Shown piece by piece: positions 5,828 through 31,000 of a stretch of 43,077 bases of DNA (positions are counted from its first letter, which is position 1; the number at the start of each line of letters is the position of its first letter). Below the pieces are notes generated by a model. That model was not told where the DNA came from, did not search any database, and was given only the letters and a program-made list of their open reading frames with translations. The DNA comes from Klebsormidium nitens (lineage: Eukaryota; Plantae; Klebsormidiophyceae). The position numbers were made by a program, and so were the translations under genes. The stretch covers positions 1-43,077 of the forward strand of contig DF237643.1 in the NCBI GenBank assembly GCA_000708835.1. Reading direction: 5' to 3'.

Positions 5828-6920
5828 TGACGTGGCACGCGGACAAGGCGCACACACGACCATCATCCAAGAGAACGTTTCCCTACCTTGCATTTGCACC
5901 TAATCCCCTTGCCGTTTCCAGCGACCGAAAGGCAGCCAGTCTGGGGAACCGATTGCCAAGAACGTTTCGAGCTCTAAGGCGACAGAAGGTAGGAAGGAGA
6001 AAAGATGATGCCGGGCAAGTACTGGAGCCGAAAGAACTGGTGCTGCGGTCTCCGCCGTATTAGTCTAGCTGACGGAATCCAACACGTTTGGTTGACAATG
6101 CCATACATGCGGCTTAAGAAAAGCGCATGAGCTTTTGAGACCTCCTTACTTCAGAAAAATAATGAGCCCAGTGAAGGTCCCTTCTGGCAATGGCATCGGG
6201 GTCTTCTCAATCGTATGGCTCAATTCGCCACCAACTTGAAGGCTGAAACACGACCCTTCCATCCCTGCCACTGATCGTAATTTTGAGTACTTCTTGAGCC
6301 AAAAAGTCACAAACGGAAGAACACATCCATCAGATGGACGAAAAAGCTCCACGCCTGCGAGGGCAGAAACATCATTTCCACGGTCGGGAAGTCTAGATGC
6401 AGATGAATACTGACAAGAAAAGGTGACGTGGCACCTGGGCACAAGGCGCGCGGCCGACGAGCATGCCAGAGAGCGTTAGCCCGACGTGACATCTGGCATA
6501 AAACTGACCCACGTGCGGATTCGATCGGGCGACCCAAAAGCAGCCAACTCAAGCAACCGATCGCCCAGAACGTCTCGATCTGTAAGGCATCGGAAGATCG
6601 GAAGGAGAAAACTTTATGCCAGGGCTGAAGTACTGGAGCCGGAAGAACTGGTGCTGCCGTCTCCGCCATTCTAGTCTAAGCTGACGCTTCAACACATCTA
6701 GTTGACCATGCAAAACACGAAGCTTAGGAACGGCGCTTGAGCTTTTGGGACCTCAGTAATTCTAGGATGCATAAGCCTCGGGTCGACGGTTCTGTCTGAC
6801 AATGGCGTTGGGATTCTTGACGACCGGTGGCTTCGATTCGCCATCAAAGCTGAAACGCGATGTTCGTCCTTGCTACTGATCGTACTTCTTGAGGTTTTTC
6901 GAGCCAAAAAGTCACAAACG
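5828..6920 (-). pseudogene. Tandem ~600-bp-period duplication (5828-6315 / 6424-6920); each copy has a decayed F-box-like reading
   Basis: The DNA duplication is clear (shared GTACTGGAGCC..AAGAACTGGTGCTGC.GTCTCCGCC and GAGCCAAAAAGTCACAAACG). One minus frame reads LA*SFLLPIFRCLTDRDVL / PASSFLLPTFCRLRARNVL, which fits the spacing of F-box LPxELLxxIFxxLxxxDL. Stops and frameshifts are present. The F-box call is inference. Confidence 0.35.
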
Positions 6921-9996: not shown

Positions 9997-10056
9997 TCAT
10001 AAGCGGGCAGCTCTGCCCATAAGCGGCCAGCCCAGCCCATACGCGGATCGCCCAAC
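9997..10056. repeat. Three ~20-bp degenerate tandem repeats downstream of the Deltex stop
   Basis: CATAAGCGGGCAGCTCTGCC / CATAAGCGGCCAGCCCAGCC / CATACGCGGATCGCCCAACT. Confidence 0.65.
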
Positions 10057-10183
10057 TGCTACTCGCAAAGCTGACCAGACGCTCCGCTCTTCGATCCTAA
10101 GCGCACAGCCGGCTAATAAGCGCAGAGATCGACCTGTAAGCGCTAAACCTGAACCATACGGACACAGCAGTTATTGTATAAGC

Positions 10184-13100
10184 TCACGCCGTCACGCCAA
10201 ACTCCGCCAGCTCCGCCTTGACCCGGGCGTGGTAAGTCTCGTCCGGGTACCCGTGCTGTGCCGCGCCGCCGTACGGGTGTGTCTTGTGGTGAATCCCCGA
10301 CCAAACAACCTGGTTAAAAAGAACCGGGGTTTGTCAAACCCGATTGCATTTACGTTTGTTGCTTTCAACAATTATGATTCTTGATTTTTTAGTAGGTACC
10401 CGTGCTGTGCTGCGCCCATACGGGTGGGTCTTGTGGTGAATCCCCGACCACACAACCTGGTTAAGGTAATCTAAGGTTTGTTAGACCCGTTTGCTTTTAC
10501 CGAGTTTGTTCTGAACAATTATGATGTGTAAGTTCATTGGCGGGTACTTGTGCTGCGCCGCGCCTTCGTACGGGTGCGTCTTGTGACGACATTCCGACCA
10601 CACAACCTAGTTAAGGATACTGAGGTTTGTCAGACCCCTTTGCTTTCACTGTTTTTGGTTTCAATAAGAGAAATTCAGGATTTGTCGGCGGTTTATTGTG
10701 TTGTGCCGCGCTTCCGTATCGGCTAGTCTTGTGATCAACTTCTATGTCTGAATCACGGAAGAAGAATGTCAATCCAATTTCGGGTGAACTTGTTGTGACG
10801 CTGACCTCCCAGTTCCGACCGTTCGTCTGTGATCGCCCCACTGTGAAGAAATGCTCTCCGCTTGGTGGCTGTCTGCAGGATCCTGATTCCCCGCACGGAA
10901 ATAAATCCCACTTTGCTGAAGGTTCCGACGACGTGAGTTCTCAAAGTGTTGTACAGTTGAGCAACGCTGACCTGGTTATTCCGCCCGTTTGTTTGTGACC
11001 GGCTCCCTTCGCTTGAAGGCCATCTGCAGGATCCCGCTTCGACAAACAAAGATTCGACTTTCTTCCCTGGCAGTTGCCTGGGAAGAACCTCACAAACCTT
11101 ACAAAGCTCCAAATTCAAGTGGCCCTGACCTGGTTATCCCGCCCGGTTGTCTGTCAGCGCCCGATGTGAACGTGACGCTTGAAGGCCGTCCGCAGGAGTC
11201 CCGGTTCCGCGCACACCAGTCAAAGTAAGTTTACGGAAAGTTGCAGAACTCAACTCTTTTTGATATTTATAATCTAAGCAAGGCTGACCTGGTTATCCAG
11301 GCCACCTATGTGTGACCGGCTCCCTGTGAGAAGATGTCTTCGCTTGAAGGCCGTCTGCAGGATTCCCGCTCTAACATACAATGTTTCAATCTCTCTCCAC
11401 TGACAGCCGGGAACTTTCGACCTTACAAAGCTCCGAGTCCAAGCGACGCTGACCTGGTTATCCCGCCGTCTGTCTTTGACCGGCCCGCAGTAAACGTGAG
11501 CCGCCGCTTGAAGGTGGTACGCGAAAGTGTTCGTTCCGCGCACAACTTTCAAATCCGTTTTTGCTGGAAATTTCAGGGGTGTCCTAATTTTGAGCAACGC
11601 TGACCTGGTTATCCGCCCGGTTGTCTGTGACCGCCTGACTGTGAACGCGAGTCGCCGCTTGAAGGCGGTCCGCAGTAAGTCCCCGTTCCGCGCAAAAAAT
11701 CTCAATTCTTTTTTCCTGAAAGTTTCAAGGGTGTCCCAATCTCAAGCATGCTAACCTGGTTATCGCGCCCGGTTGTCTGTGAGCGCCCGACGGTGAACGT
11801 GAGTCGCCGCTTGAAGGCGGTCCGGAGGAGGGCCAAAACTTCCCGCCCCTGGGCGTCGTCTACCAGGTACGCCACCCGGTTGGTACCGGAGTAGTGGGTG
11901 CCCGGGTTGGGGTGGTTGGGGCCCTGGAAAGAAAAGGGAATGCTCTCAACTCAGGAACAGACTATGCTCACAGCTCTTGATTAAAGAAGTGGGTTTGCGG
12001 TGTTTGGGGCTCTAGTCAAATCTAATCCTGCTGGGTAAAGGATTTGCGAAGGGTGACGGAAGCTTTAGCGGTACTATCTTCTACCAGGTACGCCTCCCGG
12101 TTGGTACCGAGGAATGGGTACCCGGGTTGGGGTGCTTGGGGCCCTGGGAACATGGGTTTTCCATGTAACTAGAAGGGGGACTCAAAGGTCTGGATTTGAA
12201 ATTAGTTTTCAAGGAGGTTTCGATCAAGGGTTAAGACATCCTCAGCTCTTGAAGCAGGACTGGACCTTTAGAGGTTGGAGCTCTTGGAACAAAAATGCGT
12301 CTGGATTCCGGCTGGATGACACTGAAAGTTCGGCGGCAAAAGAGACCCTTTGAGCTGGTTCGGGCAGAAATCATGAAGCGCCAGTAGCATTTGGAGGTTA
12401 GGCTGCTCACAGATGAGGGTAGAGTTAATCTGGGCTTTGGGACGAGGATTTTGCCCCGGAGCCCCAGTTTTAAAGACGGGTGGTTGCAAAGAAGCTGAGA
12501 GTTGCGAGATTGATTACCTGGACCCCATGCGGGAAGCTGTAGTTGATCACTATGACGCCACTGCCCTCGTGGCCTTCCAGCGCCACGCACGCGTGCTTCG
12601 CCTGCGGTGCGTTATGCAGCCGTTAAAGGGGGCGCTGGATGCCGCAGATTGCGCACTCGATGACTATGTGTACTTTTCTCATGGAGTATTTCAAAAATTC
12701 GCGAAAATCGGCCCCTCAAATCCGCAGGTCGCCCAAGTGGTGGACAAATGGGTCCTACGCCCAATGTGCAGCACTGCTCGGTGAGCGGCAGTGAGACATA
12801 AGAGTCATAAGGTCCTCTAGTATTACGACTCGAATGTGTTCAAGGGCGCAGAAAAAGGCGAGGCTTGACATTCAAACGCATTCCGGACGATGCGAGACTG
12901 GATAAGGGCGGAGCTTCAATGATGACTACTGACACTGTTGCAGACTTGCAGAAAGCGCAGATGCTCATAACCGTCTCGTCAACCTTCTGGTTTGGACGCA
13001 AGTTTTGAACGCAAGTACTGCCCACCTGCTCGTAAGTGTACGTTTTTACGGTCAAGGTTCCGTTCTCCGGCTGGTTCCCCGTCCGAACGCCGTACGCCCG

Positions 13101-16100
13101 CATGCACGTCGGACACTTGGGCTTCTGCGCGAAGCACTTCTTGATGCACTCCAGGTGGTACTCGTGCCTGCGAAGAAGGGTTGAATCTTTCAGAGCCACT
13201 GAAGGCCAGACTTTCGGTATCTTCTGCATCCGTCAAGGTTCAGTGCTTGACGTACTTGCATTTTGCGAAGCACTTCTTGATGCACTCTAGGTGGTTCTCG
13301 TGCCTACGGACAATACACAGAATAAAGCGTCCGAAATGGCATCAAAAGTTTCAGGGTCAAAATTGTCCACGTCCATATGCGTGTCGCAGACTTAGGCGGT
13401 TGCTCTCGAAGCACTCCTTGATGCAATCCAGGTTTTACTCGTGCCTGCGGACCAGGTTCGCATCCGGCGCAAAATCTATCCGTGAATTTTGGACCAGACG
13501 TCCAATGCACGCCGGACGCTTGAGCTTCGGACAAAACAGTACCCAAGCAGGTAGAGCACTACGAATCAAACCACGGGGGCCTTCCTGTGGATAGGCTAGA
13601 TTTGGTCACAGATAGTTCCGAACCGTCCGCAAGAACGAACGTCCACAAACCTGCGCAACAATTAAAAGGCACCTAAATGTGCAAGACAACTCACTTGCAC
13701 AGCATGAGCCGCACGGCCGGCTTATCCCGCAGCGATTCGTAGCACACGACGCAGTCTTCATCGTCCGGGTTCTTGATTGTCCGGAGAAGTGATGGGTGTA
13801 CGGAGCCGTCCATTGGGAAATCGACGGCCGAGAGCGGGGCCTCGTCTTCATCTTCGGGCTCCTTGGCAGAGGAGGTACTTGGGCTAGATGGACCTGCAGG
13901 AATAGTGGGTGCTGGTTTACGATGCGAGCAGATGCATCTGGCCGCAGAAGAGGTCAGCTCATAAAGAAAGTACAGCTCGCTCCGAAAGGTTTGGGTGTTA
14001 TGAAGTTCTACCGTCAACAAAACCCACCGGAATCTGAGCTTCGTTTTTCTCAGAGACCAGCGTCTCGTGTCAATCAAAGAAAGCATGACCACACAAGTTT
14101 CGACCTGGCAAGCGGAAATGCATCGGCATCTGGTCCGGATCACTTGAAAAATCTCCGAATCACGGCATTTTCAACGTGTACGGACTGTGTAGCACCTGGA
14201 ACAAAACGCGACAGTTCCAGACACCTAGTTTCGAGAAGCTACACCCTAACCAGACGCAAGGATCGGACTCCACAATTAACTGCGGAGAAAAGAGCATAAA
14301 AATGGTGTGGGTAAAGTATCTACATCTGAGCGTGCCATACCGGCTGGCGGCGCGTTTGCAGACGTCCCCGGCACTTGAGCGCCCGGCGCGAGGCCCGCGA
14401 GCCTAGCAGACCTCCGGAGTACCATCCCCGCGATGTTGGACAGGAACCCGCCTGCCGGAGGGGTCGGCGCCGGGGCGGAAGGAGGGGGGGAAAGCGTGGT
14501 AGTCACCTTGCGCACGGGCTGCTGCTTGCCGTTAATGGTCTGCAGAGGAAAGGGGACCGGAAAAGTGTCGGCATAAAGCGGGCCTTGAAGATGGCCTGAC
14601 GTCAGCCGCTTACGCCGACGACGTCAAGGTTTAAATGCTCATCATCCGGGACGGCGATTTTGTGAGGGGTCTTGGCACGGTTCGATTGGGGTTATCCATG
14701 CATGGTCTACGCCCACTTTAACTTCAGACAGAGATACAAAAATGGTTGGTCAAACAAAACAAAGTCCCGTTTTGAATGGGGGGGTGGCCATGCTGTAGGG
14801 AAATATTGACGCTGCACATGCGAAGACACATCGGGCCTCTGCAAGACTATAGCTCAAAACCCTGTCCAGAGGCGTCATGTACAAAAACAGTCCTTGGTGT
14901 TACCAAATCTCAAGCAGCAAACGACAGACCGGCTTTCAAAAGATCGTTGTCAACAACAAGCTGGAATTGACACATCAATCGGCTCTCCCTTTGCTCTGCA
15001 TGCACCGCCAATTAGGATCGACAGGTCGGATTTCTATCAAAAAGAATTATAAAGAACACATTGTTTCCGTCTTCTACACATTTTAATCTCTCAGAAGAAA
15101 ACCCTGTCTGAAAGAGGGTGAGTCCGGTTGGTGGCTCCAATCACTTGTCCCGGCTACTCTTGAGGCCAGCCGTGCCTCAAAGCATAGCCTATCACGGCCA
15201 GAAGGTGGGACTTCAAACTGCGATGCGATAAGAAAAAAAAAAGAAAACAGATTGAAATAAAACAAAACACAACGAGCAAAAACAAAACCTTGCTATTTGA
15301 GAAAGTTGCTCAAGCAGACAGACGCCGTAGCGCTCCGTCCCAGCTTCTTCCCGCTTTTGATCGCGTCAAAAGTACTGCCAACGAGCAGACGGAGATGCTT
15401 TCGATCTATGGGAGCATAGAAAAGGGATTTCAAGACTTAAGCCGGGCAAGGAAAGACAAAACGACCGCGAAGAGCTCGCGCGCGCGCAATCAGACCGTCG
15501 CGAGAACGTGAATCAGACGGCGTATCCAGACTTTAGATACATGTTAGATTCTGAATAAGCGCTCCTCCTCAGAAGGGGGCATCCTCGCGTTTCACAGACT
15601 ACAAGAAGCGTGATCCGGCAGCAGCTAGAGACCCTAGTCCTTTCAGCGTCAGAGCATGTTGATCCGGAAGGCCGTGTGAGAGTGTGTGGTTTTGCCACCC
15701 TCCCAACGAATTATGGTTCACTGCTGAGCTGTGGCAACTGCTTCCGTAGACCTCTAGCGGGAAACCAATGAGACTCAAGTGACCATATCAAGCTGCTAAA
15801 CGAGATTGCATCCTCATTCTATAGTTAAGAAAACCTGCCATGAAAGCATGATCCAAAGGATCAACCAACCGACAACAGAGTTCAAAGGACAAAACACTCC
15901 CGGTGTAAGGCCGAACAAGGGAAATTTAATCCTTCTCAAAGCTTGCTCGTTGAGAATAGCAGGGGCGAGTCGCTCAACAATCCCGCGTCAACGAAAGAGT
16001 AAAGTACGCGCAGAGCTTGCGGAAAGAGGGGGCCTCTTGGCGTCAGAGCGATAGCGCCAACACTTGGAATTCAATGCTTCCAGCTTCCTAGCGGAATGCT

Positions 16101-19100
16101 CGTCATGGCCAAAGGTGAGCCCAATCCCAACCGCGGAATAGATAGACTGGCCCTCGAACAATATAGGCTCATCGGGAACGCAGCTCCTTAGTCGCAGAGG
16201 CAGATGCCCCAAGTGGTTTTTCACCTTTGAAGCAAAACCGTGCATTGAGTTTGCATTCCGTTTCTCGACAGTGGAATGGGATCGAGCGAATTGAGCTTTT
16301 GTCTATCGTCGGATTTGTTGAGATGCAACACGCTTGTCGTCTGCTGTCGACATCTACCGTGCAAGTCGAGAAAGCGATGTTTGCGGAGTTCCTCACTAGA
16401 TACTTTCCTGTTTCGACGTCAGAGAAATACGAAAGGGAGCCTGAGATTACGTGGCTTTACCAACCTCCCAGCAAGTTGCTCTTCACGGCCAAGACGTGAC
16501 GCTTGAGGCTCTCAACATATCGCCCGGCTCTCGACGAGTTGCCATAAAGACAAAGTAAACCGTACTGCAGATTGCAGCTAAACTGTCCACGATTGTAATC
16601 TGTAGGCACCAGTGGTTTACAGACCCAAGCAAGAACCATCGATCTCACATTTCTGCCCAGATGCGTGGCGCGGGCGGAAAGTCCACCCGCGCTTCGGGAA
16701 TTGGTGAAGCCAGACCGCCCGAGGTTTTAGAACACCGCGCTGACCCGATATCCTGTGCGTACACAGATCCGATGCACTCCGCTAAGAAAGTGCTTGACAG
16801 CAGCTGCCAACACTGCGTCACCTCCATCATCCAGCTCCTTTCACGCAAAAAAGAAAAAGGAGGGAACGGAAACGGACGAGGATTGATAGACTGAAAAGGC
16901 ACTGTAAAAGCGGAGTTACAAAAGCATGTCGAATAACCTGGGAGAAACAACGGTTCAACCAAGGGAACGCGCACTCTAGGCATGCCACTTCAGCAAAGAT
17001 AAACAGGTACTGCAGATGAAAGTTGTTGGTATAGTCCTTATGCTAAGGGGAGACGATTCATTTGCGGAGACCTGAGCACTCACAATGCCGCCAAGACGAG
17101 AATCTTTCCAGGTACTGCAGAAATCACTGCCGCTCGAGGACCAATTGCGCGTACCTCAGCAAAGGTACGAGGGGTGTGAAGACTCTTATTTGGAAAGAAG
17201 ACCTGCTTCAACAAATGCACCGTGGTTGAGGGCGGCGAAGGGGCATCGACAGCCTTGCATAGAAATTTGACAGATTTAAGGGCTTCAGTGCAAGCTTCAC
17301 CTCTGGACTAAGCATTCGCTGGAAAATTCAGCCACCCAGGCAACCAGCATCACTGCCCCCGAAGGAACCATCCGTCCGAACACGGGTCGAATAGATTATA
17401 GCTTCTTGAACATGCAAAGTTTCAGAGGTATGCAAGACGATTGAACTCCTGCTACTCGCAAGTAAAGTACATCACAGGCCGTCACTGTCAAGTTGGAGCC
17501 CTCCTCCCCTGACTAGGACAACGGGACGGGAAGAGCAACCGGAGGATTTTCTCCTTCTTGAAGTACATCATTATGTTCCAGATACTCAAAAGTCACAATA
17601 TAAAAAGCAGACGCTCGAACTCTTCTGACGTCATTGATGAAAGTGCTGCTCGACGTGCTTGTCATAAGCGTTGGCTCCGAGCCGGGACTCGTTCAATCCC
17701 TGAACAGATCTTTGGTACTTTCTTGTCCCAAATGGACGCTCGTCATAGCCAAACACCATGACCAAATGCACAACTGGCCCTGCTTTTGTGTTTGCCAGGC
17801 ATGCTCAAAGTCTGAAGACACATCTTTCAGGTGCAAACGCTTAATAAACCTCGGAATTCAAATCTTGTCCTTTGAAAGCTGCTTGGACTCTACCAGTTAA
17901 AACGGGTTTGCAGATATGGGGCAAGATTGCCGCTCCTAAGCCCCTCTTGCAAGGGGCGTCCTGGCAACACATCAGCTACTGATACACCCCCTATTTCTTG
18001 ATAATCACTATCTAAGACACGAGACTGGTTGTTCAAACAGATATTCGGAGGACGCTATGTGGAAAGACACGGTCATGAAGATCCGACGTTCTCAAAAAGA
18101 GTTATATTCCTGGGAACGGGCTCGAGCAGGATTTGCTTCTGGCATTCAAAAAAGGTGACATACGGAGCGACTGTCTGCCAAGCCCTTATGCTTTTTGGTC
18201 GCGTATGACTGTCTGAATTGCACATTCAGGCGTTTTGTCAGAAGCTCCCAAGTCAGTTGCTTCAGCAACACACGTGGAAATTGGAAGGATAGCCTTGTTA
18301 CATTCCTTAGGACAAGCAGAAGTGCAAACGCTTCGAACGACAATGAGAGGCGGGACGCCCTTTCCAAGCGAGGCAGAACCGACATACAGACCCCCTGAGA
18401 ATGCTGGCAAGTTTCAACAGATGAGTCTTCTCACCTGCCAGGCATCGACCCGAAACTCGATCCAACGGTCCTGCCCATGGAATTAACGCGCTCCGGGCAC
18501 AAAATGGATGGCAAAACCAACTGCCTTTGAAAAACTAGTAAGAATCCCCCTGACATGTTCAACCAGAGCAAATCTTACCACCTGCCACCCGTCGACCCCA
18601 AACTCAACTCAGAAGTCCTCCCTACAAAACAAAGATGCTCCTGGCACAACCAAATCCCGTATGAAAACTTCTGGGACATCCCCCTGACATGTTGACTTAA
18701 AGCGAAACTCCCACCTGCCACGCGTCGACCCCAAACTCGATCCGGAAGTCCTGCCCGTACAGCGTCGTGAAGTCGCACTCCGCCTCGCCCGCTTCCCGGG
18801 CCGCCTCCACCCGGACGCTGATCTCCGGCGGGTATGCCTCCCAATTGTTGCCGTCGAACCACTCCCACTGGACGGCGGCTTGGCCGGGGTTTGAACCAAT
18901 GGGGTTGACTATGCGTCGGGCGTTGCGGCGGTACCCCGTGATTGGATTCACCTGTGCAAGAGAGAACGAAAGTTTGGCACAATCGGTTGTCTGAATGGAT
19001 GTTCCAAGTTCAAGGCAGTTCGAGTTCTGCAACACATCTACACAACGGGAAAAAAACTAAAGACAACGACAACGACAGTCTTTTGAAAGGAAATACATCT

Positions 19101-21353
19101 CACGAGACATGCACCAACTCACAAGAAGAGCTGGTAGCATCTGTATCGTAATTGTTAAGTTCTGAGCGATCGTGAACATGGCTCAGAAAGACCCCAACAT
19201 GCGCTGCCTATTCGAAGAAGAGGCAAGCATCCGGTCTCGTCGTAGCCGGAGATTGACAAAGTTGCAGGACCATTCAATCGAACCACAAGGCTTCTGATCG
19301 ACCTAGTAAAATGCCTCTGGCATCCCCACACAGTCTTCTGACACACACACGTTTCAGGAAGACCATAAGTAGCGTGCTCCCATTAGGTTGGAACCCATTC
19401 CTTGAACCCAGGTGAGGTGCAGTTGGTAAGCCGCAGTATAAAAGCTTCGTGAGAGCTTTGTACGACACTTGGTGGACGAACCGCTGGCTACCGATGTCTG
19501 GCAAATAAGCCACGGGTTCATGGGCTGTCCAATACCTGCCTCGATCTAGGAACTGAAAGCAAAGAGTACAAAAGAAAGCTGGAGTGATCCACAGTGTAGG
19601 AGCAGGATGTGCACAGAGCTTTGGACCTTCCAGGGAGAGAGGGCGCTTGACATATTGCAAAGGCTAAACAAGAAACCATTGCATCTCACTTCCTGAATTG
19701 ACCACAAAGCAGCCCGACAAACTTCCTCAAGTAGAACCCAGGGGAGTGGACTCAGAAGTGAGACAAGCGTAGCGCAACATATCTGCTGTGGATTTAGTAC
19801 CAACCTGTTGAGGGCTTCCTACGGCTAGACTGTGCGTTCACATACAGTGACCTGTCTAGGAATGCCGAAGGAAGGCCGACCTCGATTCAATGGGACCTGC
19901 CACTTTTGAAGCTAAGCAACCTAGACTGCATTTTCAAGCTTGCTCAGCTTGAAGTGCCTGAAGCGGAACCACGTAATCACCACTTATAACGTGGTGGCAA
20001 ATCAAAAGGTAAAAGCAAAACAACAGGGCAGACGGGATCTGCTACACGCTCTGGTCAGTGCTGAAGGATTGAAAGTAGCAAATTGTGCAATGATCAGGGA
20101 GCAAGCGATGCCTAGCATATCAGATTGATGCCACTGATACATTAACCCCAGGTCTGTAAGTAGATTAAAGCCAGCCACACTAAGGTTTGAGAATCCCAAC
20201 TGTGGACCCGGCAGCCCGAAACTGTCCACTCAATGGTAGGTTCCGCCAGAAGCTGGTCAACAAAGCCCTTAGGATTTACAAACCCCAATGGACCAAATAC
20301 ATGTTTGCTTGGTTCAACCACAGAAGGCTCCTGAGTCCTGCTCCCTTTTGTAAGATGTACAAGGAAGGCACGGGCGCTGACAGGGCAAAGGGTTGCTAAG
20401 CTCCCAAGCCAAAATGCTCAAGTGAATTACAGCAGAGCTTTCAGGACCAGGCATTCGCAACAGGTCCGCTAAAAAGGACTTGCATTGACCAAGTCTTCAA
20501 GTGAGTTTATACTGCGTTGTTCTAAGTGTGCTAAGTACACTACTATTTGGATAAGACACTTGGCCGCTCACAGCTCAGACAACCAACAACCAACTGTGAA
20601 GTTCTCAGACAGTTCTCAGAACGCCATTTCAGAAGTAAGATCCTGAACATAAAGAACATCCTCGAGGCTTGCTTGAAGGTCTGACAGAGAGGGCTCTGGC
20701 CTAATGCATGACAGGACCAGCATATGACAGGACCTGAGACAGGCTAGGCATTTTGCAGAGCTTTGTGGTTCAGCGTCCTGCTTGGACATCATACAGTCTT
20801 AAAGAAGCATGCACCAGGACTCTTGTAGAATCACAGCTGAAGCCCATTCTGAACAAAAGCAAAGACCAGCCACGATCACAAGGAGAGGCACGCCACTTTC
20901 TATCTTTGCCACCTTTGTAACACCACGTTCATGAGATGAGGGTACTATACATTTCAAATACAAATGGCAGTCTGCATTATCCTCAAACGAAAGAAGTCAT
21001 TGTCGACTACTCTGCAGAAAGCAGAACCGCATTTTCTATCAACCAGATTAGTTAAGCAACCAAAGAAGTTTGAGGTCGCACTTCCTTATGCCTTCAGACT
21101 TGCCAGATTGCATAGTGATCTCTCAGTTTCAAACAGGCACTCAGGCTTTAAAAGACCACGTCATCACAAAAACACGCACCTGCTTGGGCCCCTCCTGTGC
21201 AAACACCAGCTGGCACGTTGTGCCCCTGTCCACGATCTGGACACTCCCCTGTCCCGCTCCCTCCGCAGCTTTTATTGCAGCAGTTGCGGCGTCGTCGTAC
21301 TTTTGCCACCCGCTGTCTTCCCGCCGCTCCCAATGCACCACGCTAGTTGCCAT
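10184..21353 (-). CDS. DTX: Deltex-like E3 ubiquitin ligase (WWE-WWE-linker-RING-H2-Deltex C-terminal domain), ~442 aa, 8 coding exons
   Basis: Exons 21353-21180, 18951-18715, 14539-14341, 13893-13695 (alternative acceptor 13911), 13167-13026, 12601-12518, 11923-11756, 10309-10184. All introns are GT-AG and phases match. Translation: WWE1 MATSVVHWERREDSGWQKY..Q|VNPITGYRRNARR; WWE2 VQWEWFDGNNWEAY..WQ|TINGKQQPVRKV; RING-H2 CVVC..LCKHEYHLEC..CPTC; DTC YGVRTGNQP..GPNHPNPG..AYLVDDAQGREVL..AFKRRLTFTVGRSQTTG..VVWSGIHHKT..HGYPD..VKAEL..GV. An acceptor just upstream of the ATG suggests a 5' UTR intron, so the true start could lie further upstream. Confidence 0.93.
10310..10750 (-). repeat. Tandem array of three degenerate copies of the Deltex last-exon acceptor + exon start
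   Basis: Copies of GTAC..GTGCTG.GC.GCGC..CGTACGGGTG.GTCTTGTG..CCGACCA.ACAACCT.GTTAA have junctions at 10457, 10607 and ~10750 (true junction 10310). Spacing is ~147-150 bp. Confidence 0.93.
10755..11755 (-). repeat. Tandem array of six degenerate copies of the Deltex exon-7 3' end + donor + intron start
   Basis: The plus-strand motif CTGACCTGGTTATCC.CCCGGTTGTCTGTGA..GCTTGAAGGC recurs with junctions at 11605, 11454, 11289, 11130, 10972 and 10806 (true junction 11756). Spacing is 151-166 bp. Confidence 0.95.
12065..12150 (-). repeat. Degenerate copy of the Deltex exon-7 acceptor + exon start
   Basis: TCTACCAGGTACGCCTCCCGGTTGGTACCG..GGGTACCCGGGTTGGGGTGCTTGGGGCCCTGG matches 11859-11927, offset 220 bp. 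Confidence 0.92.
13262..13455 (-). repeat. Two degenerate copies of the Deltex RING exon-5 acceptor + exon start
   Basis: GCGAAGCACTTCTTGATGCACTC.AGGTGGT.CTCGTGCCT recurs with junctions at 13304 and 13445 (true junction 13168). Spacing is 136 and 141 bp. Confidence 0.92.
18380..18714 (-). repeat. Two degenerate copies of the Deltex exon-2 (WWE2) 3' end + donor + intron start
   Basis: CACCTGCCA..CGTCGACCCCAAACTC and CCCCCTGA(C/G)A recur with junctions at 18582 and 18435 (true junction 18715). Spacing is 133 and 147 bp. Confidence 0.9.
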
Positions 21354-21359
21354 GAACCT

Positions 21360-22080
21360 CTGCTTTGGGAAACACACGAGTGAAATGCAGACGATGGAAG
21401 GATTGCAGCAGGTGTGGGGGCCAATGCTGGGGAACGTGGTGTTTGTTTCCCACATGCACAAAACTTCAAACAAGCAAAATGGTGGAGGTGACGACCCTTT
21501 CAAGGGTTTGCCCTGCAGGCGCTGTGTAGGGATCATCCTGGTTCTGAGCCCAGCATTGCTGAAACGGTTAAGCTATGTGTAGGAGATAACCATCATAAGA
21601 GAACCTCGCTTCAGCTGTATCTGGTACATGTTGCGGCCGCATTCTAAATTATGGCACCCCCTTAACCCAGACATCCAGCTGGGTTAGCGGATCTAACCCA
21701 GGCAAGACTGGTTGACGTCAGCGGGGCTGGACCTTCTCAGAGTCATACATGGGGGCGGCATGCAAGATGGAGGCGCAGCAGCTTTTCCTCCCTCTCAAAC
21801 TTAAAGGGGCGGCTATCATATCTCGAGAGCTGTTGGAAGGAGGAGAACAGCTTGATCTGCAGCAGTGTATACGGCCGCTTGTCGCTTGTTGGCAAGACCT
21901 CGAAACAGAGGTCTAAATTGCTGAGCGGATTGGTGGTTGGGCGTGTTTTATGCTTGTTCAGGCTTGCTGGACAACAAGAGAATCCTCAAATTCAGTGTGA
22001 ACAAACTGAACTAACACTTGGGATATTGCGGGGTTGAAAGTGTGCACGCTTAATGCAGCAATTCTTGCTGACACTTGAGA
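21360..22080. promoter_or_regulatory. Probable bidirectional promoter / 5' UTR region shared by DTX-like and RAB3GAP1
   Basis: The divergent ATGs are 731 bp apart, and each is preceded by an acceptor-like site. Three alternating TAACCCAG/CTGGGTTA motifs (21663, 21679, 21694) lie next to TGACGTCA (21713-21720). Confidence 0.6.
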
Positions 22081-22083
22081 ACC

Positions 22084-25000
22084 ATGGGTATATCGGAGGA
22101 CGAGGTAGGAGACTGTCTGCTCTTCCCCACTGTTCTCTTCCCCTATTTGCTGAGCTACTCAATAGCCAGTGATTGTGCTTGTTATGTAAGGTTGGAGTCC
22201 TCGTCTCTCCATTTTCAAAGAGCGGCAGCTGGCGCCTTTGCTCATGATTCTGCAATGAACACTGTGATGCTGAGTTTCAAGATGCTGCGTCTGAGCAGAT
22301 GTATCCTGAAAAGATATCCTGCTGTTGTCATTTTGCATCACAATCTTTCTCCTGACAACAACCCTTTCGGTATTTGACAACTTCAGATGATCAGTCCATC
22401 TCAAGGAATTCATAAGTAAATGCCCCCAGTAAACACCTGGCTATGTTCGAGGCACCTTACTGAAAGTGGATGCTGTCTGCAGGGGGAGGGTTTTGAGGAC
22501 TTCACACTTGCATCCCCCTGGGAAAAGTAGGTGCCTCAGCCTGCCTCAGAATTGGTCAGATGCTTGTACGATGCTAGTACCTAGGAACTTTGTTTGAACA
22601 GTTGCTTCATAAAATTGAACTGCTAATATCCACCTTGATGTTTGGAGATTAGCTTTGTGGAAGAGTAATCAGCTTTCAGTGGGGGGTGATGGACCCATCC
22701 AGGGTGGAAAAGCTGTGCAATCTTTCAATGATGCTTGTGGCGATGTTTTCACCCATGAAGTTCTAAGTCTGCTCTTTCTTCCATGGCAAAATGTGTTATC
22801 TGGTTGGTCTAGTGCATTAGTGCCTTGAGATCGCTCCAAGCATCCTGCAAATACGTTCGAGAGATTCAGTGTACTTGACCTTTTGCAGGTTGCTGGACGG
22901 GTTTGAGAAAGCAGTAAGGGCATGGCAGGCAGCGGACGGAGGGGTTCAGGTGGGGCTTAATCAGTTGCCTTGAAAACTCTTCCAATAATTCCCACTTAAG
23001 CTTAAAGAGTCTCCCTGACCCTGATGTTAGACTCAGCGCTTACGACGGTGGCGTGTTCTGGCGTTCAATCACATACACATGTTTCAACGGCATCTTTCTA
23101 TCAAAGAAACAGTCACAGATTGACTAGTAGTGGGCGCACACAGAATAGCAACTTGCTCAGCCCGGGGAAAATCTTACTGCAGAGTAGAGTGGGGGACGAG
23201 ACTACTCAAACTTCGAGATTTCTTGTCAACCTGCCTGTGCCAGCTGCGTTCTCACGTCACTCCTGTTCGATGTTTGCCTTCTTGTTAGCATGAACACACC
23301 AATCCAGCCCTCTAAGGGTTGACCAGTTCGCAGTGCAGAACCTGCACAGGACCTTCTCAAAGTGTTTGATCATCTTTTGCGGTCAGCGGATGGCAAAACG
23401 TTTGCCAGGACCCGTTTCAATGCAACTTCTCGCTTCCGGCTGTGTACAGGCTGGTGCGAGTACTCCCCATTTGGTACACCTAGAGTACGCCGGGCAGAAG
23501 CTTTTCTTGAGGCGCCACGTCATAGCACCTCAAGCCTCAGGTTCGTGCATCTCTCCCAACGAAAATAAAAATCTACAGGAAGTAATCATGTACAGTTTTT
23601 CTGGCGATGCACTGCTCTTCTTCCAGGTTGAATCAAGTCAACCTGATCGGAATTCAATGTGTGGTGTTTGCCCTAATCGCTTCCTCCCAATTCGAGCGAA
23701 GCATCGAATCAAGTTAAGCAGTTCCTTTCAAGCTCGTAAGGAATCTGCTAGGCCGTGTTCGTGTTCAGGTTTCCTACAGTTGATACTATCAGTGTGCACC
23801 AAATCCGCCACTAACTCTCAAACAAGTTCAAGAGATAGTACCTTCGTACAGATTGACAAAAGTGGCGGCTCGACCTGGGTGTTTCTCGTACTCGCGTAGT
23901 CAAGCGGCCGATCAGCTGGGAAGTTCAAGATTTAAGAAAGTCCTATCTTTGATCACTTCGAACCATCTGGATGAAGCAGCTTTTTTCTGCAATAGAGCAG
24001 ACTACTCGTAGAATTTCGATAGATCGTCTGAAGCAATACAAACGGACATCTTAGTCAAAAACCCGCTTACAGGTGGAGGCACAGCTCCCGATCCCTGGGG
24101 CGCAGAGCATCCCCTTCAGCTGCAGTTTGGAGTAACTGACTTTCTGGTGAGTACGCAGCTGCCTTTTTTCACCCTCGGTGCATCTTTACCGTCAGAATAA
24201 ACCCTGACAAGTCCTGTCACCTTTCTCCCGAGCCTGTTCGGAGTGTATGGATTTTGCTAAGCGTACTGTATCTTTGTTGGCGGAGAGGTGGCAGTCGATT
24301 GAGGTGGGGGTAAAAAGGACGGAGCAACATGCTTTGATAGTGAGCGTATTCATGTTTGCGCGAAATATTCGAGGCACTTTGCTGCTTTCTGCTTCGAATC
24401 CGTTCTTGGCAAACCAAGTACAGGACACGACATTCCGTCCCCTTCGCTGAGAAGGAAGGCAACCGGAGCTTTGTGTCCGAGCCTAAGGACCGTTCGAACT
24501 TTAAGCTGCCTTGTTCTTCACAGGTTTCAGGTGGTTTTGATTGGAAGGCATTCGAACCGTCTATAAAACGGCGCAGGTCGGGCTGCCTGTTGAACGTACT
24601 CTGTCGCTCGTTTTACAACCGGCTTCTTTCTCTCTCTGCTGTTCCTTTGCTGACCGAACTGCCGAAAGCTCGCTAGGCAGCCCCAAATGGGTCTTGAAAT
24701 GCTGGATCTGATCTACAGCTATCTCGAAGACTGCCATTTTTGTGGCGCAGATATGTGGACCGGCAGAGGGGAAGATTGGATCGGCCTTGGCCAGTATGCT
24801 TCTCAGCACGGCAGCTGTTGGCCTTGCTAACGCTGGCAGGTAATGACCTAGCCTTTTGAAAGGGTTGTCCTCGATGCAGACTGGCGATGTGCCAGTGTCC
24901 AAAAGGACACAGCTTGACCATCCAAATACCCGTCAGCACACCGTTACTCTTTATCGAGTATAGCTAACTTCACGGAAAAGGATGATGAGGTGAGCTAATA

Positions 25001-28000
25001 GATTAGACTTTGTTAGTAGGACGTCACAATCATTTCAACAAGCAGGGACTCCAAAATAAAATATCAGAACTAACCATAAGCCTAAACATTGCGAACCATT
25101 TCAATAGTTGAACGTATACCCAAAGCGATCCGCTCTGCTCGCAGTTCCCTCCCAGCGTTTATACCATTGCCGAACTTGGAAACCGCTGGGCATCGGGGCA
25201 TCGCCGTCCGGACGTCCGTGGGCCTGGTCCAATATTTGGACACTGAGCGGACGGTGCATAAGGCCCCCGCGCCACACCCGGAGCTGCCCGCCCTTGTAGA
25301 CTCTTTGCGCGGCCGAATGGTAAGCGTCCCGTGTAAACCCTGCGGATCTGGACTTTTTTAGATCATTTTCTAAGGACCACGCTTGATTGCGGTAGGCATC
25401 TGCGGACACTTCCCTGTTAAAAAGGTGTGTCTACAACCGGTACTGTCCATTTTACAAACAGCGAATGTTTTGGGCTTTTAACTTTCTCACGCGCTCCATC
25501 AACTACCGTTTTGAAGCTTCTAAGGCGCCCACGTCAGCCGCTCCAAGGCCCGAGCTGATACGCCTGGATTTGAGCTTCAAAAACTTTACGTACCTTATCA
25601 ATTCAAGAACTTTCCCCCGAATCTACGAACCTGAAGTCAATCGATTTCTAAATTTCTCCATCTCTCTCGTCAGCGCCTTCTTGTAACGTCCACAACGCCG
25701 CCGCCCTGCAGATTAACATGCGCCAAACCTTCGAAACCCCCGTTCCAAGTATTCAAACCCTACTTCATTTCGTTCCAGACCATTTTCAATTTATTCGCAG
25801 CGCCTTCTCGGAACGGCCCCCGACCCCGTCGCCCTCCACATCAGCATGCGCCAAACCTTCGAAACCCCGGGGCTGGCCTTGGGGGATCCCTCCGGTCGGT
25901 CCGAAGCAGCGGGCCAAGCGGGTGGAGACGGGGAAGACGGGTTCTGGGACGACGACACGCCCTGGGCGGCATGGCGTAACCTAGACGACCCGGTGCGAGG
26001 TGGGTTACGGAGGAAGGTTTCGCTTGGGTTAATATTTTGCAAGCCTCGCGGCTTTAACAATCCTGTTTCGACCCAAAGTATGTTGAGAACGGGGGAGGTT
26101 CACGATGACGACACGCCCTGGGCGGCGTGGCACAGCCTAGACGACCCGATTATTGGTGGGTTACGGAGGAAGGTTTGCTCAAGGCAAGGGAGAAGGTGTG
26201 CGAATTCAGACTTCCTTTTGTACCGGCCCATGTCCTTTCCTTTCCGCAGATCCACGGCTGAAAGAAGACCGTCCGAGTGACGTCCTTTGTTGAAGATGTT
26301 CTCCCTTGCGGCCAGTGCTCTTCCTTGACCGCAATGGTTCGAAGAACGGCCGATTTCGGCAAAATTCTACTCCTTTTGTCCGCCCGTTGGTCCGGATTAT
26401 CTGTCACCGTCCGTGTCCGGAAGATGGTTCCTTCTCTACGGTCCGCACCGTCCGCATGCTTACAGGCTTCGCTTTGTGGCCCTTTGTGTCCGCAGACGGT
26501 GGACATATTGGTATGACTAGTATCCTTACTCATATTGTGCATGTTCGATATCTGCAGGTTTCCGTCTGCACGTTCGCGGCCCTGCATGCGCACCCCGTCC
26601 AAAGAGCATCGGACTGAAAAACGAGCGGTCCGTAAGTCCCTCGTACTGACACCGTCCGCATATTTGCAGGCTTCCGTGTGTCCGCCTCATGGCCTTTCCT
26701 GTCCGCAGCCGGTCCGAAAGATGTCCGAGCGATTGAGGTCAAGCCGGCGGGGTCAGCCGCAGAGTGGCGCCTCGAGCCGGTTTTTGACACGACACACAGC
26801 GGGTGAGAACCCCCAAGTGGGGGTTGCGGGATCTGACATAACGAATAATATTGCTCGGCAAATTTTAAGGTCATTTGAAAAGCTGCGCGCCTACGACTGT
26901 TGCTGCACGTTCTGGTCGAAATATTGGTTTTCGCGTGCCACGGAGAAGCCACTTGGGGGTTCGTCCTCTTGAAAGTACTCAGGCGAAGAAAAAGCTTCGA
27001 AAGGCGGGCTTGCGAAAAGCTGTTCCCACCTCAATGTTTTGCTCACAAAGTGCAGATTGTTTGAGTGATTTTTATATGCCGATGTCCTCCCAAGGTTTCA
27101 GCAACGACTAAGCACGTTGATTGTATTTTCGGACTGGAGCACACAAACCTTGACAGCCGCAAAGTCCAATTGACAGCCGCAACATCCAATCGAAAACCAC
27201 CAGTAGGAAGCCATTGTAATCAAAGTATCCTACAATCAAGACACTGTCCGCGCTCCTCCGTTGCGCAGAGCAGTCACCGCTGAGGGGGAGGCCAGCGGCT
27301 TCGCCAGCTCGCTCCGGGCGCTTTCCATCGCGTATCTGTGCACAATCGGCACCAAGTTTATGGACGACTTTGCGCATTCCAGTGAGTCCTGCAGCTGCTC
27401 TGCTGCTCATCAAAAGGCCATAGTCGAAGCATGTTTCTTCGATGAAAGTTGTTCAAGAGCTCAGAGTCTGGTCCTCAGTGTGCTCCCGCTTCCCGTCACC
27501 ACATCGGAAAGTCATCGGGGCCAAATGTCGAAAAGAAGCAAACCTGGGGCTTCATTTTGGCCGCGTGATTCATTTCGCCGTCGTCTTTCGCCGCGTGTTC
27601 TCTATGATCAAGCCGGTCCGAGCGATCCCGTCCTTTCTAAAATCAAGCCGCCGAATCTTCTCTCGTTCTGAATCAAAGATTTGGACTCCAGCACCTGCCA
27701 CTGTGAAGGCCAAATGGTGTTCCGCAGAACACGGATGACGAGCTGCAACCTGTTGTCATGCAGACCTGACCGAGCGGAACGAGATGTGGGCCCTCCGTCG
27801 TGCCTTCGACGTCCCCGGCTCCCTCTTTCAGATCCCGCCCCCGACTGCTATCATTCGAAGCGTTCAGAAGCTCTTTGATGAAGGTGAGCGCTTCTGCGGT
27901 TTCTAAACTTTTTTGTGGGCTGCTCAGCGGTTCCTTTTGCGCTCCTTCATTACACTTGCTTTCATGACACACATCCGCTTCAACGATAATGCAACCGACG

Positions 28001-31000
28001 GAGATTCATATCCGCCCTTACGGTCCATCTGTGTGAATCTTCTGAAGCGCCAGTCTCTTGAATTAGCACTCTTTTTCCGCCTTCATTCTTCGCTGCCCAT
28101 GCTCCGTACTCTAGCGTCGATCAACCTCTCTTCCGCCCAGCTGTGACGATAAGTTCTTTCACTGTTGCTCCTTGCTTCCAGATTCCCCTCTGCCGGAAGC
28201 ACCCCCGGCCGCAGGCCGACCCCTTCACCTTCCCTGCAAAGCAGCGCCTCCAGGGTCCCTATTTGCACGCTTCAGTATGCAGGCGCTTCGCTCCCCCAGA
28301 ATACAAGGTGGGGTTACCATTGAAAGCTCAGTGCTGAAACCTCTGGGTAAAGGAGATTTAGGGTTCCAAAGCATTCTGGGGGTTGACAACAATCTAATGT
28401 GCTAAGACTCCAATTTACCCGAGCTTCGGGCTCAAAGCTGTTTGTAAGTTGGAGGGAACAAGGGGCGAAAAGTTTCGGGGTTGACGATACAAGTACACGT
28501 TTGCAGCCTCGGAGAGTGGTCAAGTAGAACTCGTTGCCGGACAGCAGCCTTCTTTGTTCTTATGTTCCACTAGTACCATGACGGGCACGCAGTCGTGCTA
28601 ACGAGAAACACGACCTGTAGTTCGACCCTTGGTCAACCCGCAAGTTACCCTAACCCGAAGCCTAAACCTAACCTGCAGCTGTAGCGGCGCTGTGGACACA
28701 GCTGGTGCAGGAGGTCCGGTGGTTCTGGGAGGAGGCGGAGCCGCTTCCCCACGTCGCAGCTGACGGGCCGCCCGATCTCGCGTGCTGCCTCGTGCACCAA
28801 AAGCTGCAAATGGTAAGCGTTTCCATACTAGTTCTTTGAACTTGGTCGCCTTACGAGTGTTGAAGCGCGGCGACTCCACTTGGGCCCGAAGGGTTGCCCG
28901 ACCGCGCGTGCTGCCTCGCACACCAAGAGCTGCCGTTGGTGTCGACTGTTTGCATGCAATTTCGAGATAGTAAATCGGTCGCAGATTCGATACTCGCTGC
29001 CAGTTTGTGCGGTGTGTCGTAAAGTGTGTAAGCAAGGCTGCAGATAGTGGGCGTTCGAAAACGGCGGCGCCACGACCAGACTGCCGTTGCTTGTTTTCTG
29101 GAGACCTTTACCTACAACGTTTGAGGGTCGATTGGCCTTCTGCCTAGTAAATGAGAAGAAGGAACGGTGGTTTGAGCTTTGATCAAACGTTCTCGAAGTT
29201 CGTTAATTGCTTTGTTGCTTGGTCGTTGCTGCTTTATTCAGGGTTCTCTTCCGATCGAGATGTCCTGTATCTTAACGCGACACGGAGGAAGAGGAGCCTG
29301 GAAAAAGCTGATGTTTCAGGGCCTCTACGTTAGTCGCATTTGTTCGTCGAGCTCGTTCCTCAGCAGGGAATTCTCAGGCCACTGGCTGCTGATCAGTTCG
29401 GGTCTTCTGTGGGCTTTTGGAGGTTTCGCGGACTAAGCTGACAGCGAGCACTCATTTTGTGACACGCACCTTATGGCATTCCCGTGTCTCCGTAGAAAGC
29501 GCAGCTTGTGAGTTCTACCCGTGCTTTGTACAGCTGGCAGCGTGCATCAGGAAGCGCGCAGCGGACCCGGACTTCCGGCGGAAGAGCAGGCGGACGTCCG
29601 AGCAACGGACTTCGCCAGCGGACGACGTTTCGGACCGAGACACGCCCGACGAAAGCGACAGTCACGGGAGAGAAGCTGCAGAAGGTGCGTCACGATGACT
29701 TCTAACGCCGTCAGATACGGCATACTGTTTCTGAAAGAGAGTTCTGACTGAGTGACTTTGATAGCATCATTGAATCCGTGGATACGGGCAGTAAAGACTT
29801 GTCCAGCTTTGACGGCTTGAACTGTTGTTGCAATGGGGACGCTGTTTTGTTGCACAGTCTTGTTCATGTCAGAAAGATCTCGCCAATTTGGAACCATGTG
29901 GCAAGATCGATAGGACCGCTATCTTTTGGTCTATGATAGACGAAGCATGGTCAACCACACTTGCAACGTCGTACCCAGTGTTCCGAGAAGTCCACTCATG
30001 CATACCAATCGTGTGTGCATCATCTTTTCAAAACGGCCATCAGAAACCGAGATCGTCCTGGAAACCGGACAGTCAGTAGAACATGTTGCTTATCGCACGG
30101 CTCCGAAGGTCGAACGAGAACCCGAGATCTGGCTTGTCGGGTCACAAGTTGTAAACCGGCTTGTTTCGTGGCCACAGGGCCGTCAAGAGGTGGCGGCGAC
30201 GACTGGAACTCCGCCCCCGGCTGGGAGGACGCCGACTTTGAAGAAGAGCGCGCGTCGGATGCTACGGACGCTGATGTCACTGCTGACGCCCGGAAACAGT
30301 CCGCCGACCAACCAGAAACGGACACGTTAGCAGCCTCGGTTTTCGACTGCTTTCGAACGCAGGAGGAAGCGGCGTCGGAGGCGAGTGCGGACACGCAGTA
30401 CGACAGCTGTTCGGACACGGAGGTGTTCGAGTCGGGGGGGGGCTATTCGCCCACAGAACCGTCCACCCTGAGTGCGGGCGGGCGTCCGAGTTGGGCGCAT
30501 TCGCCGGGAGGCGCGTCCGAAGTGGTCCGGAAGCGCGGGAAAGAGAAGGATTGGAGGGTCCGGGGAAACTTTGGGGGGGGTGAAAAAGGGCCCGGGCAGA
30601 GGGGGCGGGACGAGGAAGATATGGACGGACGGGAAGGGTCGCTGGGCCCCGTGAAGAATCTGTGGCTGTTGAAAGTGAAGCGGAGGATACACGAGCCGAT
30701 AACACAGGTGAGTGGCAGAAAACTCCCTGCTTATACTTTCTACTTCGCGTGTAGCCGGCTCTCGGTTTTTGAAGCTTCTAAAGCCTCGAGCCTCCGTGCG
30801 AAACGCACCGGGAAGCATTTTGGGAAATGTGGAGAATGCCGAAGGACGGTTGTGACCAGCAATGCGTCCCGAATTGTGTTTGAGGCGTGCCAAACTGCCA
30901 TCGTCATCTTCGATCCGCTGCTGCAGACGTTTTGTCCCGGCGACCCGTCCCCCGTGATTTTACCCTCGGTGTCGCCCAAAAGCCGCGCGCCGTCCTCAGC

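What the first reader, a model, noticed from the sequence alone, without database searches (positions are those of the whole stretch)
10310..28945. Splice-junction 'echo' system: introns grown from serial copies of their own exon-intron boundaries
Seen: at least nine separate splice junctions, in two unrelated genes on opposite strands, have one to six degenerate tandem copies of [exon end + splice site + adjacent intron] lying inside the intron. Donors are echoed downstream and acceptors upstream, always in the same orientation, and the functional exon stays intact. I found no such echoes in the hemerythrin or C10orf53 introns. Inference: a recurring junction-centred duplication process acts as an intron-growth ratchet. 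It fills introns with decoy splice sites and frozen older versions of the exons. I do not know of a description of this as a genome-wide system, but I cannot search the literature here.
Basis: partly seen in the sequence, partly recalled or inferred. Interest (0 to 1): 0.93.

Follow-up and report, generated by a model that had tools for sequence, protein, structure and literature searches.

The report
Introns padded with copies of exon edges
In two neighbouring genes of this alga (Klebsormidium nitens, according to earlier scan notes), nine introns have grown by stacking decaying head-to-tail copies, about 150 bases long, of their own exon-intron boundary, and one such intron is missing altogether from three related genomes.

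Summary
All nine junctions carry same-strand copies of [exon edge + splice site + nearby intron], and every copy lies inside the adjoining intron. Five junctions are in a Deltex-like gene (- strand) and four in RAB3GAP1 (+ strand). RNA contigs from three studies show that only the outer, true sites are spliced.

A formal probe test found echoes at 9 of 40 junctions on the expected side. It found none on the wrong side and none in reverse orientation. A sensitive scan of all 43 kb found no tandem duplication of this size that lies wholly inside an intron or between genes.

New here:
- The 1446-nt Deltex intron, made almost wholly of echoes, is absent from three related genomes and from a Tribonema homologue.
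- It is bounded by a 10-nt direct repeat.
- It is retained in about 7-8% of RNA depth.
- Its copies hold graded mixes of ancestral and derived exon bases, so they are a dated fossil series.

Most likely these are neutral relics of local tandem duplications that straddle a splice site, later reshaped by unequal exchange and gene conversion. Whether the duplication itself is aimed at junctions remains unresolved.

This scan had already noted the same pattern elsewhere in this genome. I found no published description.

The parts
10310..11755 (-). Deltex intron 7 (1446 nt). Present in this genome only. Bounded by the direct repeat TAACCAG|GTT.
   Evidence: RNA joint 10306/11753 has 10 letters that fit both sides. 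The site is continuous exon in L001, L002 and L004 and in the Tribonema locus L005. Retained-intron contigs reach about 7-8% of exon depth.
10756..11684 (-). Six donor echoes of exon 11756-11922. CCAG|GT sites lie at 11605, 11454, 11289, 11130, 10972 and 10806; spacing is 151-166 nt.
   Evidence: All six keep AG|GTCAGC, whereas the true donor is GTTAGC.
10310..10755 (-). Acceptor echoes of the last Deltex exon. AG| sites lie at 10457 and 10607, with a decayed third copy near 10755. Period 147-150 nt.
12077..12150 (-). Acceptor echo of exon 11756-11922, lying 221 nt upstream of the true acceptor. Carries a frameshift.
   Evidence: An echo at the same junction exists in L001 and L002 (147-148 nt upstream) but not in L004.
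13265..13464 (-). Two acceptor echoes of the RING exon 13025-13166. Periods 136 and 141 nt. Both contain stop codons.
   Evidence: None found in L001, L002 or L004.
18429..18712 (-). Two donor echoes of the WWE exon 18713-18982. Periods 133 and 147 nt.
   Evidence: Weaker donor echoes also follow this exon in L001, L002 and L004.
25652..25740 (+). Acceptor echo of RAB3GAP1 exon 25801-25999. Period about 128 nt.
   Evidence: Exon supported by homologues.
26082..26179 (+). Donor echo of RAB3GAP1 exon 25801-25999. It lies 156 nt downstream, in frame, with no stop between. It keeps the ancestral WHS.DDP.
   Evidence: The open frame is ORF 25846-26280.
26211..26606 (+). Three acceptor echoes (26211-26271, 26446-26500, 26548-26606) of RAB3GAP1 exon 26670-26803.
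   Evidence: The exon start reads GFRVSASW, matching homologue GFEVVATW.
28867..28963 (+). Donor echo of RAB3GAP1 exon 28675-28812 (which ends ...HQKLQM|gt). Period 126 nt.

Best explanation
The echoes are relics of local tandem duplications of roughly 130-220 bp (median about 150) that happened to include one splice site.

The outermost site keeps being used, so the inner copy (exon fragment + splice site + some intron) becomes intron and the protein is unchanged. Repeats of this event at the live junction push older copies deeper into the intron. Block duplications and unequal exchange among units add further copies. Gene conversion from the selectively constrained exon keeps the exon-derived part of a copy recognisable long after its intron-derived part has faded.

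The net effect is intron growth, plus a dated series of old exon versions. No function is needed.

Shown: the copies exist, they are intronic, they differ in age, they are over-represented at junctions, and an echo-filled intron varies in presence between species.

Inferred: the molecular route of duplication. Candidates are fill-in of staggered nicks, replication slippage, or unequal sister-chromatid exchange.
For: - Anatomy and RNA-supported junctions.
- Side and orientation test: 9/40 junctions on the expected side, 0/38 on the wrong side, 0/42 in reverse complement.
- No same-size duplication lies wholly in an intron or between genes in 43 kb. P is about 3e-6 (uniform model) to 7e-3 (conservative).
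- Age series: the donor copies share K. nitens-derived versus ancestral bases at 12:2, 9:5, 6:8, 11:2, 6:6 and 6:7. The RAB3GAP1 echo keeps the ancestral WHS.
- Copies carry stops and frameshifts and do not appear in mature RNA contigs.
- Mosaic units and two- to four-unit offsets indicate block duplication or exchange.
- Exon-derived parts are 0.8-0.95 identical while intron-derived parts are 0.35-0.72. In the two multi-copy Deltex intron-7 arrays this gap also holds between echo copies. True and echo copies share species-specific bases in L001 and L002.
- Relatives carry echoes at some of the same junctions and at other junctions.
- Tandem duplications arising from adjacent nicks are documented in plants (papers found).
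Against: - A uniform duplication process does not by itself explain the absence of purely intronic duplicates.
- Echo splice dinucleotides survive more often than neutral decay predicts: 17/18, P 0.004-0.02 at 80-85% per-site identity.
- Two short islands (GCCTTCAAGCG and ATAACCAGGTCAGCG) are nearly invariant across the donor copies.
- Copy 4 of the donor array is young although it lies deep in the array.
- In several arrays homology covers only part of the period.
Confidence: 0.7

Rival explanations
1. A duplication mechanism that is itself aimed at splice junctions. It might be tied to chromatin (units near one nucleosome in length), to transcription or splicing, or to breaks at the palindromic CCWGG-type junction sequence. 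It would be active across this algal lineage and able to create introns as well as enlarge them.
For: - 9 junction arrays against 0 intronic or intergenic ones.
- Median period about 150 nt.
- Echoes at the same junctions in several species and at different junctions in relative L003.
- Intron 7 occurs only in this genome. It has a 10-nt boundary repeat and an AACCWGGTT palindrome at both ends.
Against: - A 128-bp triple duplication sits inside a gag-like ORF in L003, away from any junction.
- Exon parts range from 45 to 135 nt, so units are not centred on the junction.
- Gene conversion biases which duplicates remain visible.
- The sample is small, about 100 kb.
- No chromatin data were available.
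Confidence: 0.35
2. Pure survivor and visibility bias. Duplications fall everywhere, but only those that carry an exon piece stay recognisable (through one conserved partner and gene conversion) and are tolerated.
For: - Exon-derived parts are far better preserved than intron-derived parts.
- For about half the arrays the intron part alone would not be detected.
Against: Three Deltex arrays still have detectable intron-derived parts (0.63-0.74 identity). Purely intronic duplicates of that age would therefore be seen, yet none exists in about 13 kb of intron plus about 20 kb of other DNA (P 0.002-0.007).
Confidence: 0.2
3. The arrays are functional splicing decoys that tune intron retention or splice-site choice.
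For: - GT/AG is kept in 17/18 copies.
- Conserved islands surround the echo donors.
- The echo-filled intron 7 is retained at about 7-8% of exon depth, against 3% or less for its neighbours.
- The RAB3GAP1 donor and its echo are in frame, 156 nt apart, with no stop between.
Against: - No echo-site joints appear in contigs of three RNA studies, although contigs drop rare forms.
- The arrays differ between close relatives.
- The copies decay with age.
- Gene conversion explains the preserved sites.
Confidence: 0.1
4. The copies are alternative or mutually exclusive exons, or an assembly artefact.
For: The tandem layout resembles tandem exon duplication.
Against: - Copies are partial exons with stops and frameshifts and with only one splice site each.
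- They are absent from mature RNA contigs.
- The copies differ by 10-40%, and the whole intron is reproduced exactly in independent RNA libraries.
Confidence: 0.02

Closest known systems
Intron gain by tandem genomic duplication of an exon segment holding AGGT (Rogers model; reviewed in PMC3443670; Drosophila cases in PMC2891723; potato RdRp in PMC4974935)
   Same: - Local tandem duplication supplies spare splice sites.
- The coding sequence stays intact.
- Intron 7 sits at an AG|GT proto-splice site that is continuous exon in relatives.
- Its two ends share 10 identical bases.
   Different: - Most echoes here lengthen introns that already exist rather than create new ones.
- They form arrays of up to six copies.
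- In intron 7 the intron ends show no significant likeness to the opposite exon, which the simple model predicts.
Internal gene duplications that span exon-intron boundaries (Gao and Lynch 2009, cited in PMC3443670; the paper is not held, so its content is from my own knowledge)
   Same: Partial-exon-plus-intron duplicates are silenced by use of the outer splice site.
   Different: Here the size is regular (about 150 bp), the copies are serial, about one junction in four or five is affected, and the same junctions are hit in several species. As far as I know these features were not reported there.
Human introns derived from tandem arrays with repeated 5' splice sites (Zhuo et al. 2007; found only as a citation) and minisatellites offering multiple donors
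   Same: Tandem units each carry a donor site inside an intron.
   Different: Those units are short repeats unrelated to the neighbouring exon, and they are used for alternative splicing. Here the units are copies of the gene's own exon edge, and RNA contigs show no use of them.
[quoted passage not shown]
   Same: Intron 7 has a target-site-duplication-like 10-nt repeat that contains AG|GT.
   Different: No terminal inverted repeats and no other copies occur in the window. The units contain host exon sequence.
Decoy exons that promote intron retention (human erythroblast work; from my own knowledge, not checked here)
   Same: Unproductive splice sites lie inside an intron that is retained more often than its neighbours.
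   Different: No evidence here that the echo sites engage the splicing machinery. The copies are lineage-specific and decaying.

Membership tests
Junction-straddling tandem duplication (intron extension) | Head-to-tail, same-strand copies that each contain an exon end, its splice site and adjoining intron | tested here: met
Junction-straddling tandem duplication (intron extension) | The outer (true) splice site is used and the copies are removed with the intron | tested here: met
   RNA joints for the Deltex 3' half. For RAB3GAP1 and the WWE exon there is homology or cross-species conservation only.
Junction-straddling tandem duplication (intron extension) | Copies lie only on the intron side of their junction and only in the same orientation | tested here: met
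   9/40 on the expected side, 0/38 on the wrong side, 0/42 in reverse complement.
Intron gain by tandem duplication (Rogers model) | The intron is absent from orthologues, which have AG|GT at the site | tested here: met
   L001, L002 and L004 read ...CAACCAG GTTGTG... without interruption. The Tribonema locus is also continuous. Direction (gain versus loss in the relatives' common ancestor) is favoured but not proven.
Intron gain by tandem duplication (Rogers model) | The intron's 5' part is a copy of the downstream exon and its 3' part is a copy of the upstream exon | tested here: not met
   Alignment against shuffled controls gives z < 2 for every unit. Exon copies are present but in the opposite order: upstream-exon copies in the 5' half, downstream-exon copies in the 3' half.
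Introner / transposon-derived intron | A dispersed multi-copy element with terminal repeats and a target-site duplication | tested here: inconclusive
   A 10-nt boundary repeat is present. There are no other copies in the window or in the fetched loci. The whole genome could not be searched.
Mutually exclusive / tandem exon duplication | Complete exon copies with both splice sites and an open frame, used in mRNA | tested here: not met
   The copies are partial, carry stops or frameshifts, and are absent from RNA contigs.
Recursive splice sites | AG|GT preceded by a pyrimidine tract, with stepwise splicing intermediates | tested here: inconclusive
   Echo donors read AACCAG|GTCAGC but have no pyrimidine tract upstream. 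Read-level RNA was not available.

The most novel reading that the evidence does not exclude
This algal lineage has a duplication process of about one nucleosome length that is aimed at exon-intron junctions. It steadily enlarges introns, can give birth to new ones (Deltex intron 7), and leaves in each array a datable record of past exon sequences.
Probability: 0.35. Interest if true: 0.8.

Novelty: new variant of a known kind. Interest (0 to 1): 0.62.

Why it matters
How introns grow and arise is a long-standing question with few caught-in-the-act examples.

Here about one junction in four or five of two ordinary genes shows serial duplication of its own boundary. One intron built from such copies is present in one genome and absent in three relatives.

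The copies also act as dated fossils of the exon, which gives an internal clock for these events.

If the bias to junctions proves to be mutational, it would point to an unknown link between splice sites (or their chromatin) and DNA breakage or repair.

If it is only a filter, it still documents a major, simple route of intron expansion in a close algal relative of land plants.

Tried and rejected
- **Rogers model for intron 7.** I tested whether its splice-site-proximal segments are decayed copies of the opposite exon. Local and global alignment against shuffles gave no signal. Blocks I saw by eye were not above chance.
- **Tree of the seven donor units.** It was unresolved, and the units are mosaic.
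- **Echoes of the WWE donor.** I first concluded from blastn that they were specific to this genome. A more sensitive search found them in all three relatives, so I withdrew that claim.
- **RAB3GAP1 exon model.** My first model (26558-26634 + 26709-26803) was wrong. Homologue alignment gave one exon, 26670-26803.
- **RAB3GAP1 5' half in relatives.** Those echoes could therefore not be compared across species.
- **Other ORFs.** Pfam found nothing in ORFs at 3-8 kb and 35-42 kb.
- **L001 57-bp repeat.** The repeat before the RING exon is a pyrimidine-rich simple repeat, not an echo.
- **Gao and Lynch 2009.** The paper could not be read.
Full report
**Setting.** Earlier notes of this scan name the genome as the streptophyte alga Klebsormidium nitens. 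I did not verify this independently. Two genes fill 10-34 kb of the window.
- On the - strand lies a Deltex-like gene (two WWE exons, RING, DTC).
- On the + strand lies RAB3GAP1. Its first conserved exon is at 22465-22527, about 1 kb from the most upstream conserved Deltex exon.

- Contigs from three RNA studies show five Deltex introns, all GT..AG on the - strand: about 10310-11755, 11923-12516, 12601-13024, 13167-13693 and 13892-14338. Every echo lies inside an intron, and only the outer sites are joined.
- RAB3GAP1 exon ends rest on alignment to full-length homologues...DDPVRG|gt at 25999, GFRVSASW... from 26670...HQKLQM|gt at 28812.
- In a formal test the terminal 60 nt of each exon was aligned to the flanking introns. 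Strong matches (z 10-31) occur at 9 of 40 junctions on the expected side, at 0 of 38 on the wrong side, and at 0 of 42 in reverse complement.
- The nine junctions:

| Gene | Junction |
|---|---|
| Deltex | acceptor 10309 |
| Deltex | donor 11756 |
| Deltex | acceptor 11922 |
| Deltex | acceptor 13166 |
| Deltex | donor 18713 |
| RAB3GAP1 | acceptor 25801 |
| RAB3GAP1 | donor 25999 |
| RAB3GAP1 | acceptor 26670 |
| RAB3GAP1 | donor 28812 |

- Periods run from 126 to 221 nt, median about 150.
- The arrays are not an assembly artefact. The copies differ by 10-40%, and RNA contigs of 1496 nt reproduce the whole of intron 7 exactly.

**Anatomy of the largest case.** Deltex intron 7 (1446 nt) is almost entirely echo.
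- Six donor units follow the true donor. Each holds at least 71 nt of exon, then CCAG|GTCAGC, then intron sequence.
- Three acceptor units precede the true acceptor. Each holds about 67 nt of intron, then AACCAG|, then about 81 nt of exon.
- The 670-nt RAB3GAP1 intron 26000-26669 has the same facing layout: one donor echo and three acceptor echoes.
- Intron 7 appears as a retained-intron contig at about 7-8% of exon depth in all three RNA studies. Its neighbours reach 3% or less.

**Relatives.** Exon-sized ORFs led to four contigs from two JGI metagenomes: L001, L002, L004 (Deltex) and L003 (RAB3GAP1 3' half). Exons are 75-90% identical to the window, and introns do not align with it.
- Intron 7 is absent from all three Deltex relatives. 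The sequence runs ...GACAACCAG GTTGTGTGG... as one exon.
- A Tribonema minus genomic homologue is also continuous at this site.
- In this genome the intron is bounded by the 10-nt direct repeat TAACCAG|GTT. That is more than splice consensus explains.
- Together these points favour a gain in the K. nitens lineage. A loss in the relatives' common ancestor is not excluded.
- How the intron arose is open. The simple tandem-duplication model predicts that its ends copy the opposite exons, and that was not supported. Insertion with a target-site duplication would also leave the boundary repeat.
- Echoes are not confined to this genome:
  - L001 and L002 have an acceptor echo at the same junction as 12077-12150. 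L004 has none.
  - All three relatives have weak donor echoes after the WWE exon.
  - L003 has two acceptor echoes at a RAB3GAP1 exon that has none here.
  - L003 also has a 128-bp triple duplication inside a gag-like ORF. Duplications of this size are therefore not limited to junctions.

**Ages.** I looked at sites where the live K. nitens exon differs from all three relatives. At those sites the six donor copies share derived versus ancestral bases as follows:

| Copy (outward from the exon) | Derived : ancestral |
|---|---|
| 1 | 12:2 |
| 2 | 9:5 |
| 3 | 6:8 |
| 4 | 11:2 |
| 5 | 6:6 |
| 6 | 6:7 |

- Copies were thus made at different times and are mostly older with distance. Copy 4 is the exception.
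- The RAB3GAP1 donor echo keeps WHS.DDP as in homologues, while the live exon reads WRN.DDP.
- The echoes are real fossils of earlier exon versions.

**Signs of later reshaping.**
- Units are mosaic, and offsets of two to four units occur.
- Exon-derived parts are much more alike (0.8-0.95) than intron-derived parts (0.35-0.72). In the two multi-copy Deltex intron-7 arrays this gap also holds between echoes.
- In L001 and L002 the true and echo copies share species-specific bases.
- Gene conversion from the constrained exon explains this. It also explains why 17 of the 18 echo copies first read keep GT or AG (P 0.004-0.02 at 80-85% per-site identity).

**Is there a real excess at junctions?**
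- Take a uniform model of 150-bp duplications in which every junction-straddling event is viable. The chance that all nine arrays straddle a junction is about 3e-6.
- Counting only the three Deltex arrays whose intron parts are still detectable gives about 7e-3, or 2e-3 for the whole window.
- No duplication of this size lies wholly in an intron or between genes.
- The excess is therefore real in this sample. Visibility bias from gene conversion inflates it, and about 100 kb of sequence is a small sample.

**Mechanism.**
- Best supported: local tandem duplication straddling one splice site, tolerated because the outer site is used, then repeated and reshaped. Duplication from adjacent nicks is documented in plants.
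- Whether the breaks are aimed at junctions, for example through chromatin, is open.
- A decoy function is possible but unsupported.

**Literature.** Searches found nothing on this in Klebsormidium. They did find the general models of duplication-driven intron gain.

**Earlier scan notes.** The scan had already noted the same pattern in many other windows of this genome. Three follow-ups reached similar conclusions. I did not test those windows.

Noticed in passing
window 318-1399 and 3770-4877 (also 1113-1291 / 4891-5061 and 4592-4740 / 4894-5040): A 1.1-kb dispersed direct repeat, 85% identical, with copies 3.4 kb apart. It could be the two ends of a small LTR-type element. No Pfam hits in the nearby ORFs.
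   Followed up: partly
window 5799-6315 and 6397-6920: A direct repeat with a 598-bp period, 72% identical. It is the only local repeat in the window that is not a junction echo. Its nature is unknown, and Pfam found no domains.
   Followed up: partly
window 21360-22465: The most upstream conserved exons of Deltex (- strand) and RAB3GAP1 (+ strand) lie about 1 kb apart and point away from each other. This suggests a shared bidirectional promoter.
   Followed up: no
window 25999 and 26155: The RAB3GAP1 donor and its echo donor are 156 nt apart, in frame, with no stop between (ORF 25846-26280). Use of the echo would insert 52 residues that repeat the DDDTPWAAW motif.
   Followed up: no
window 10310-11755: The echo-filled intron is retained at about 7-8% of exon depth in three RNA studies, against 3% or less for neighbouring introns.
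   Followed up: partly
L003 10815-11181: Three 128-bp tandem copies (94% identical) lie inside a gag-like CCHC zinc-knuckle ORF of a relative. This is the same size class as the echoes but is not at a splice junction.
   Followed up: partly
L001 1-1550, L002 485-2719, L003 444-2951: Long intron-free ORFs (734-835 residues) with no Pfam hit on record lie next to the genes in the relatives. They may be mobile elements. Gene neighbourhood differs from this window.
   Followed up: no
window 39005-39223: A run of 219 N, which is an assembly gap.
   Followed up: no
window 10000-21400; L005: A full animal-style Deltex layout (WWE, WWE, RING, DTC) occurs in a streptophyte alga. A DTC-domain homologue also occurs in the xanthophyte Tribonema minus.
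   Followed up: partly
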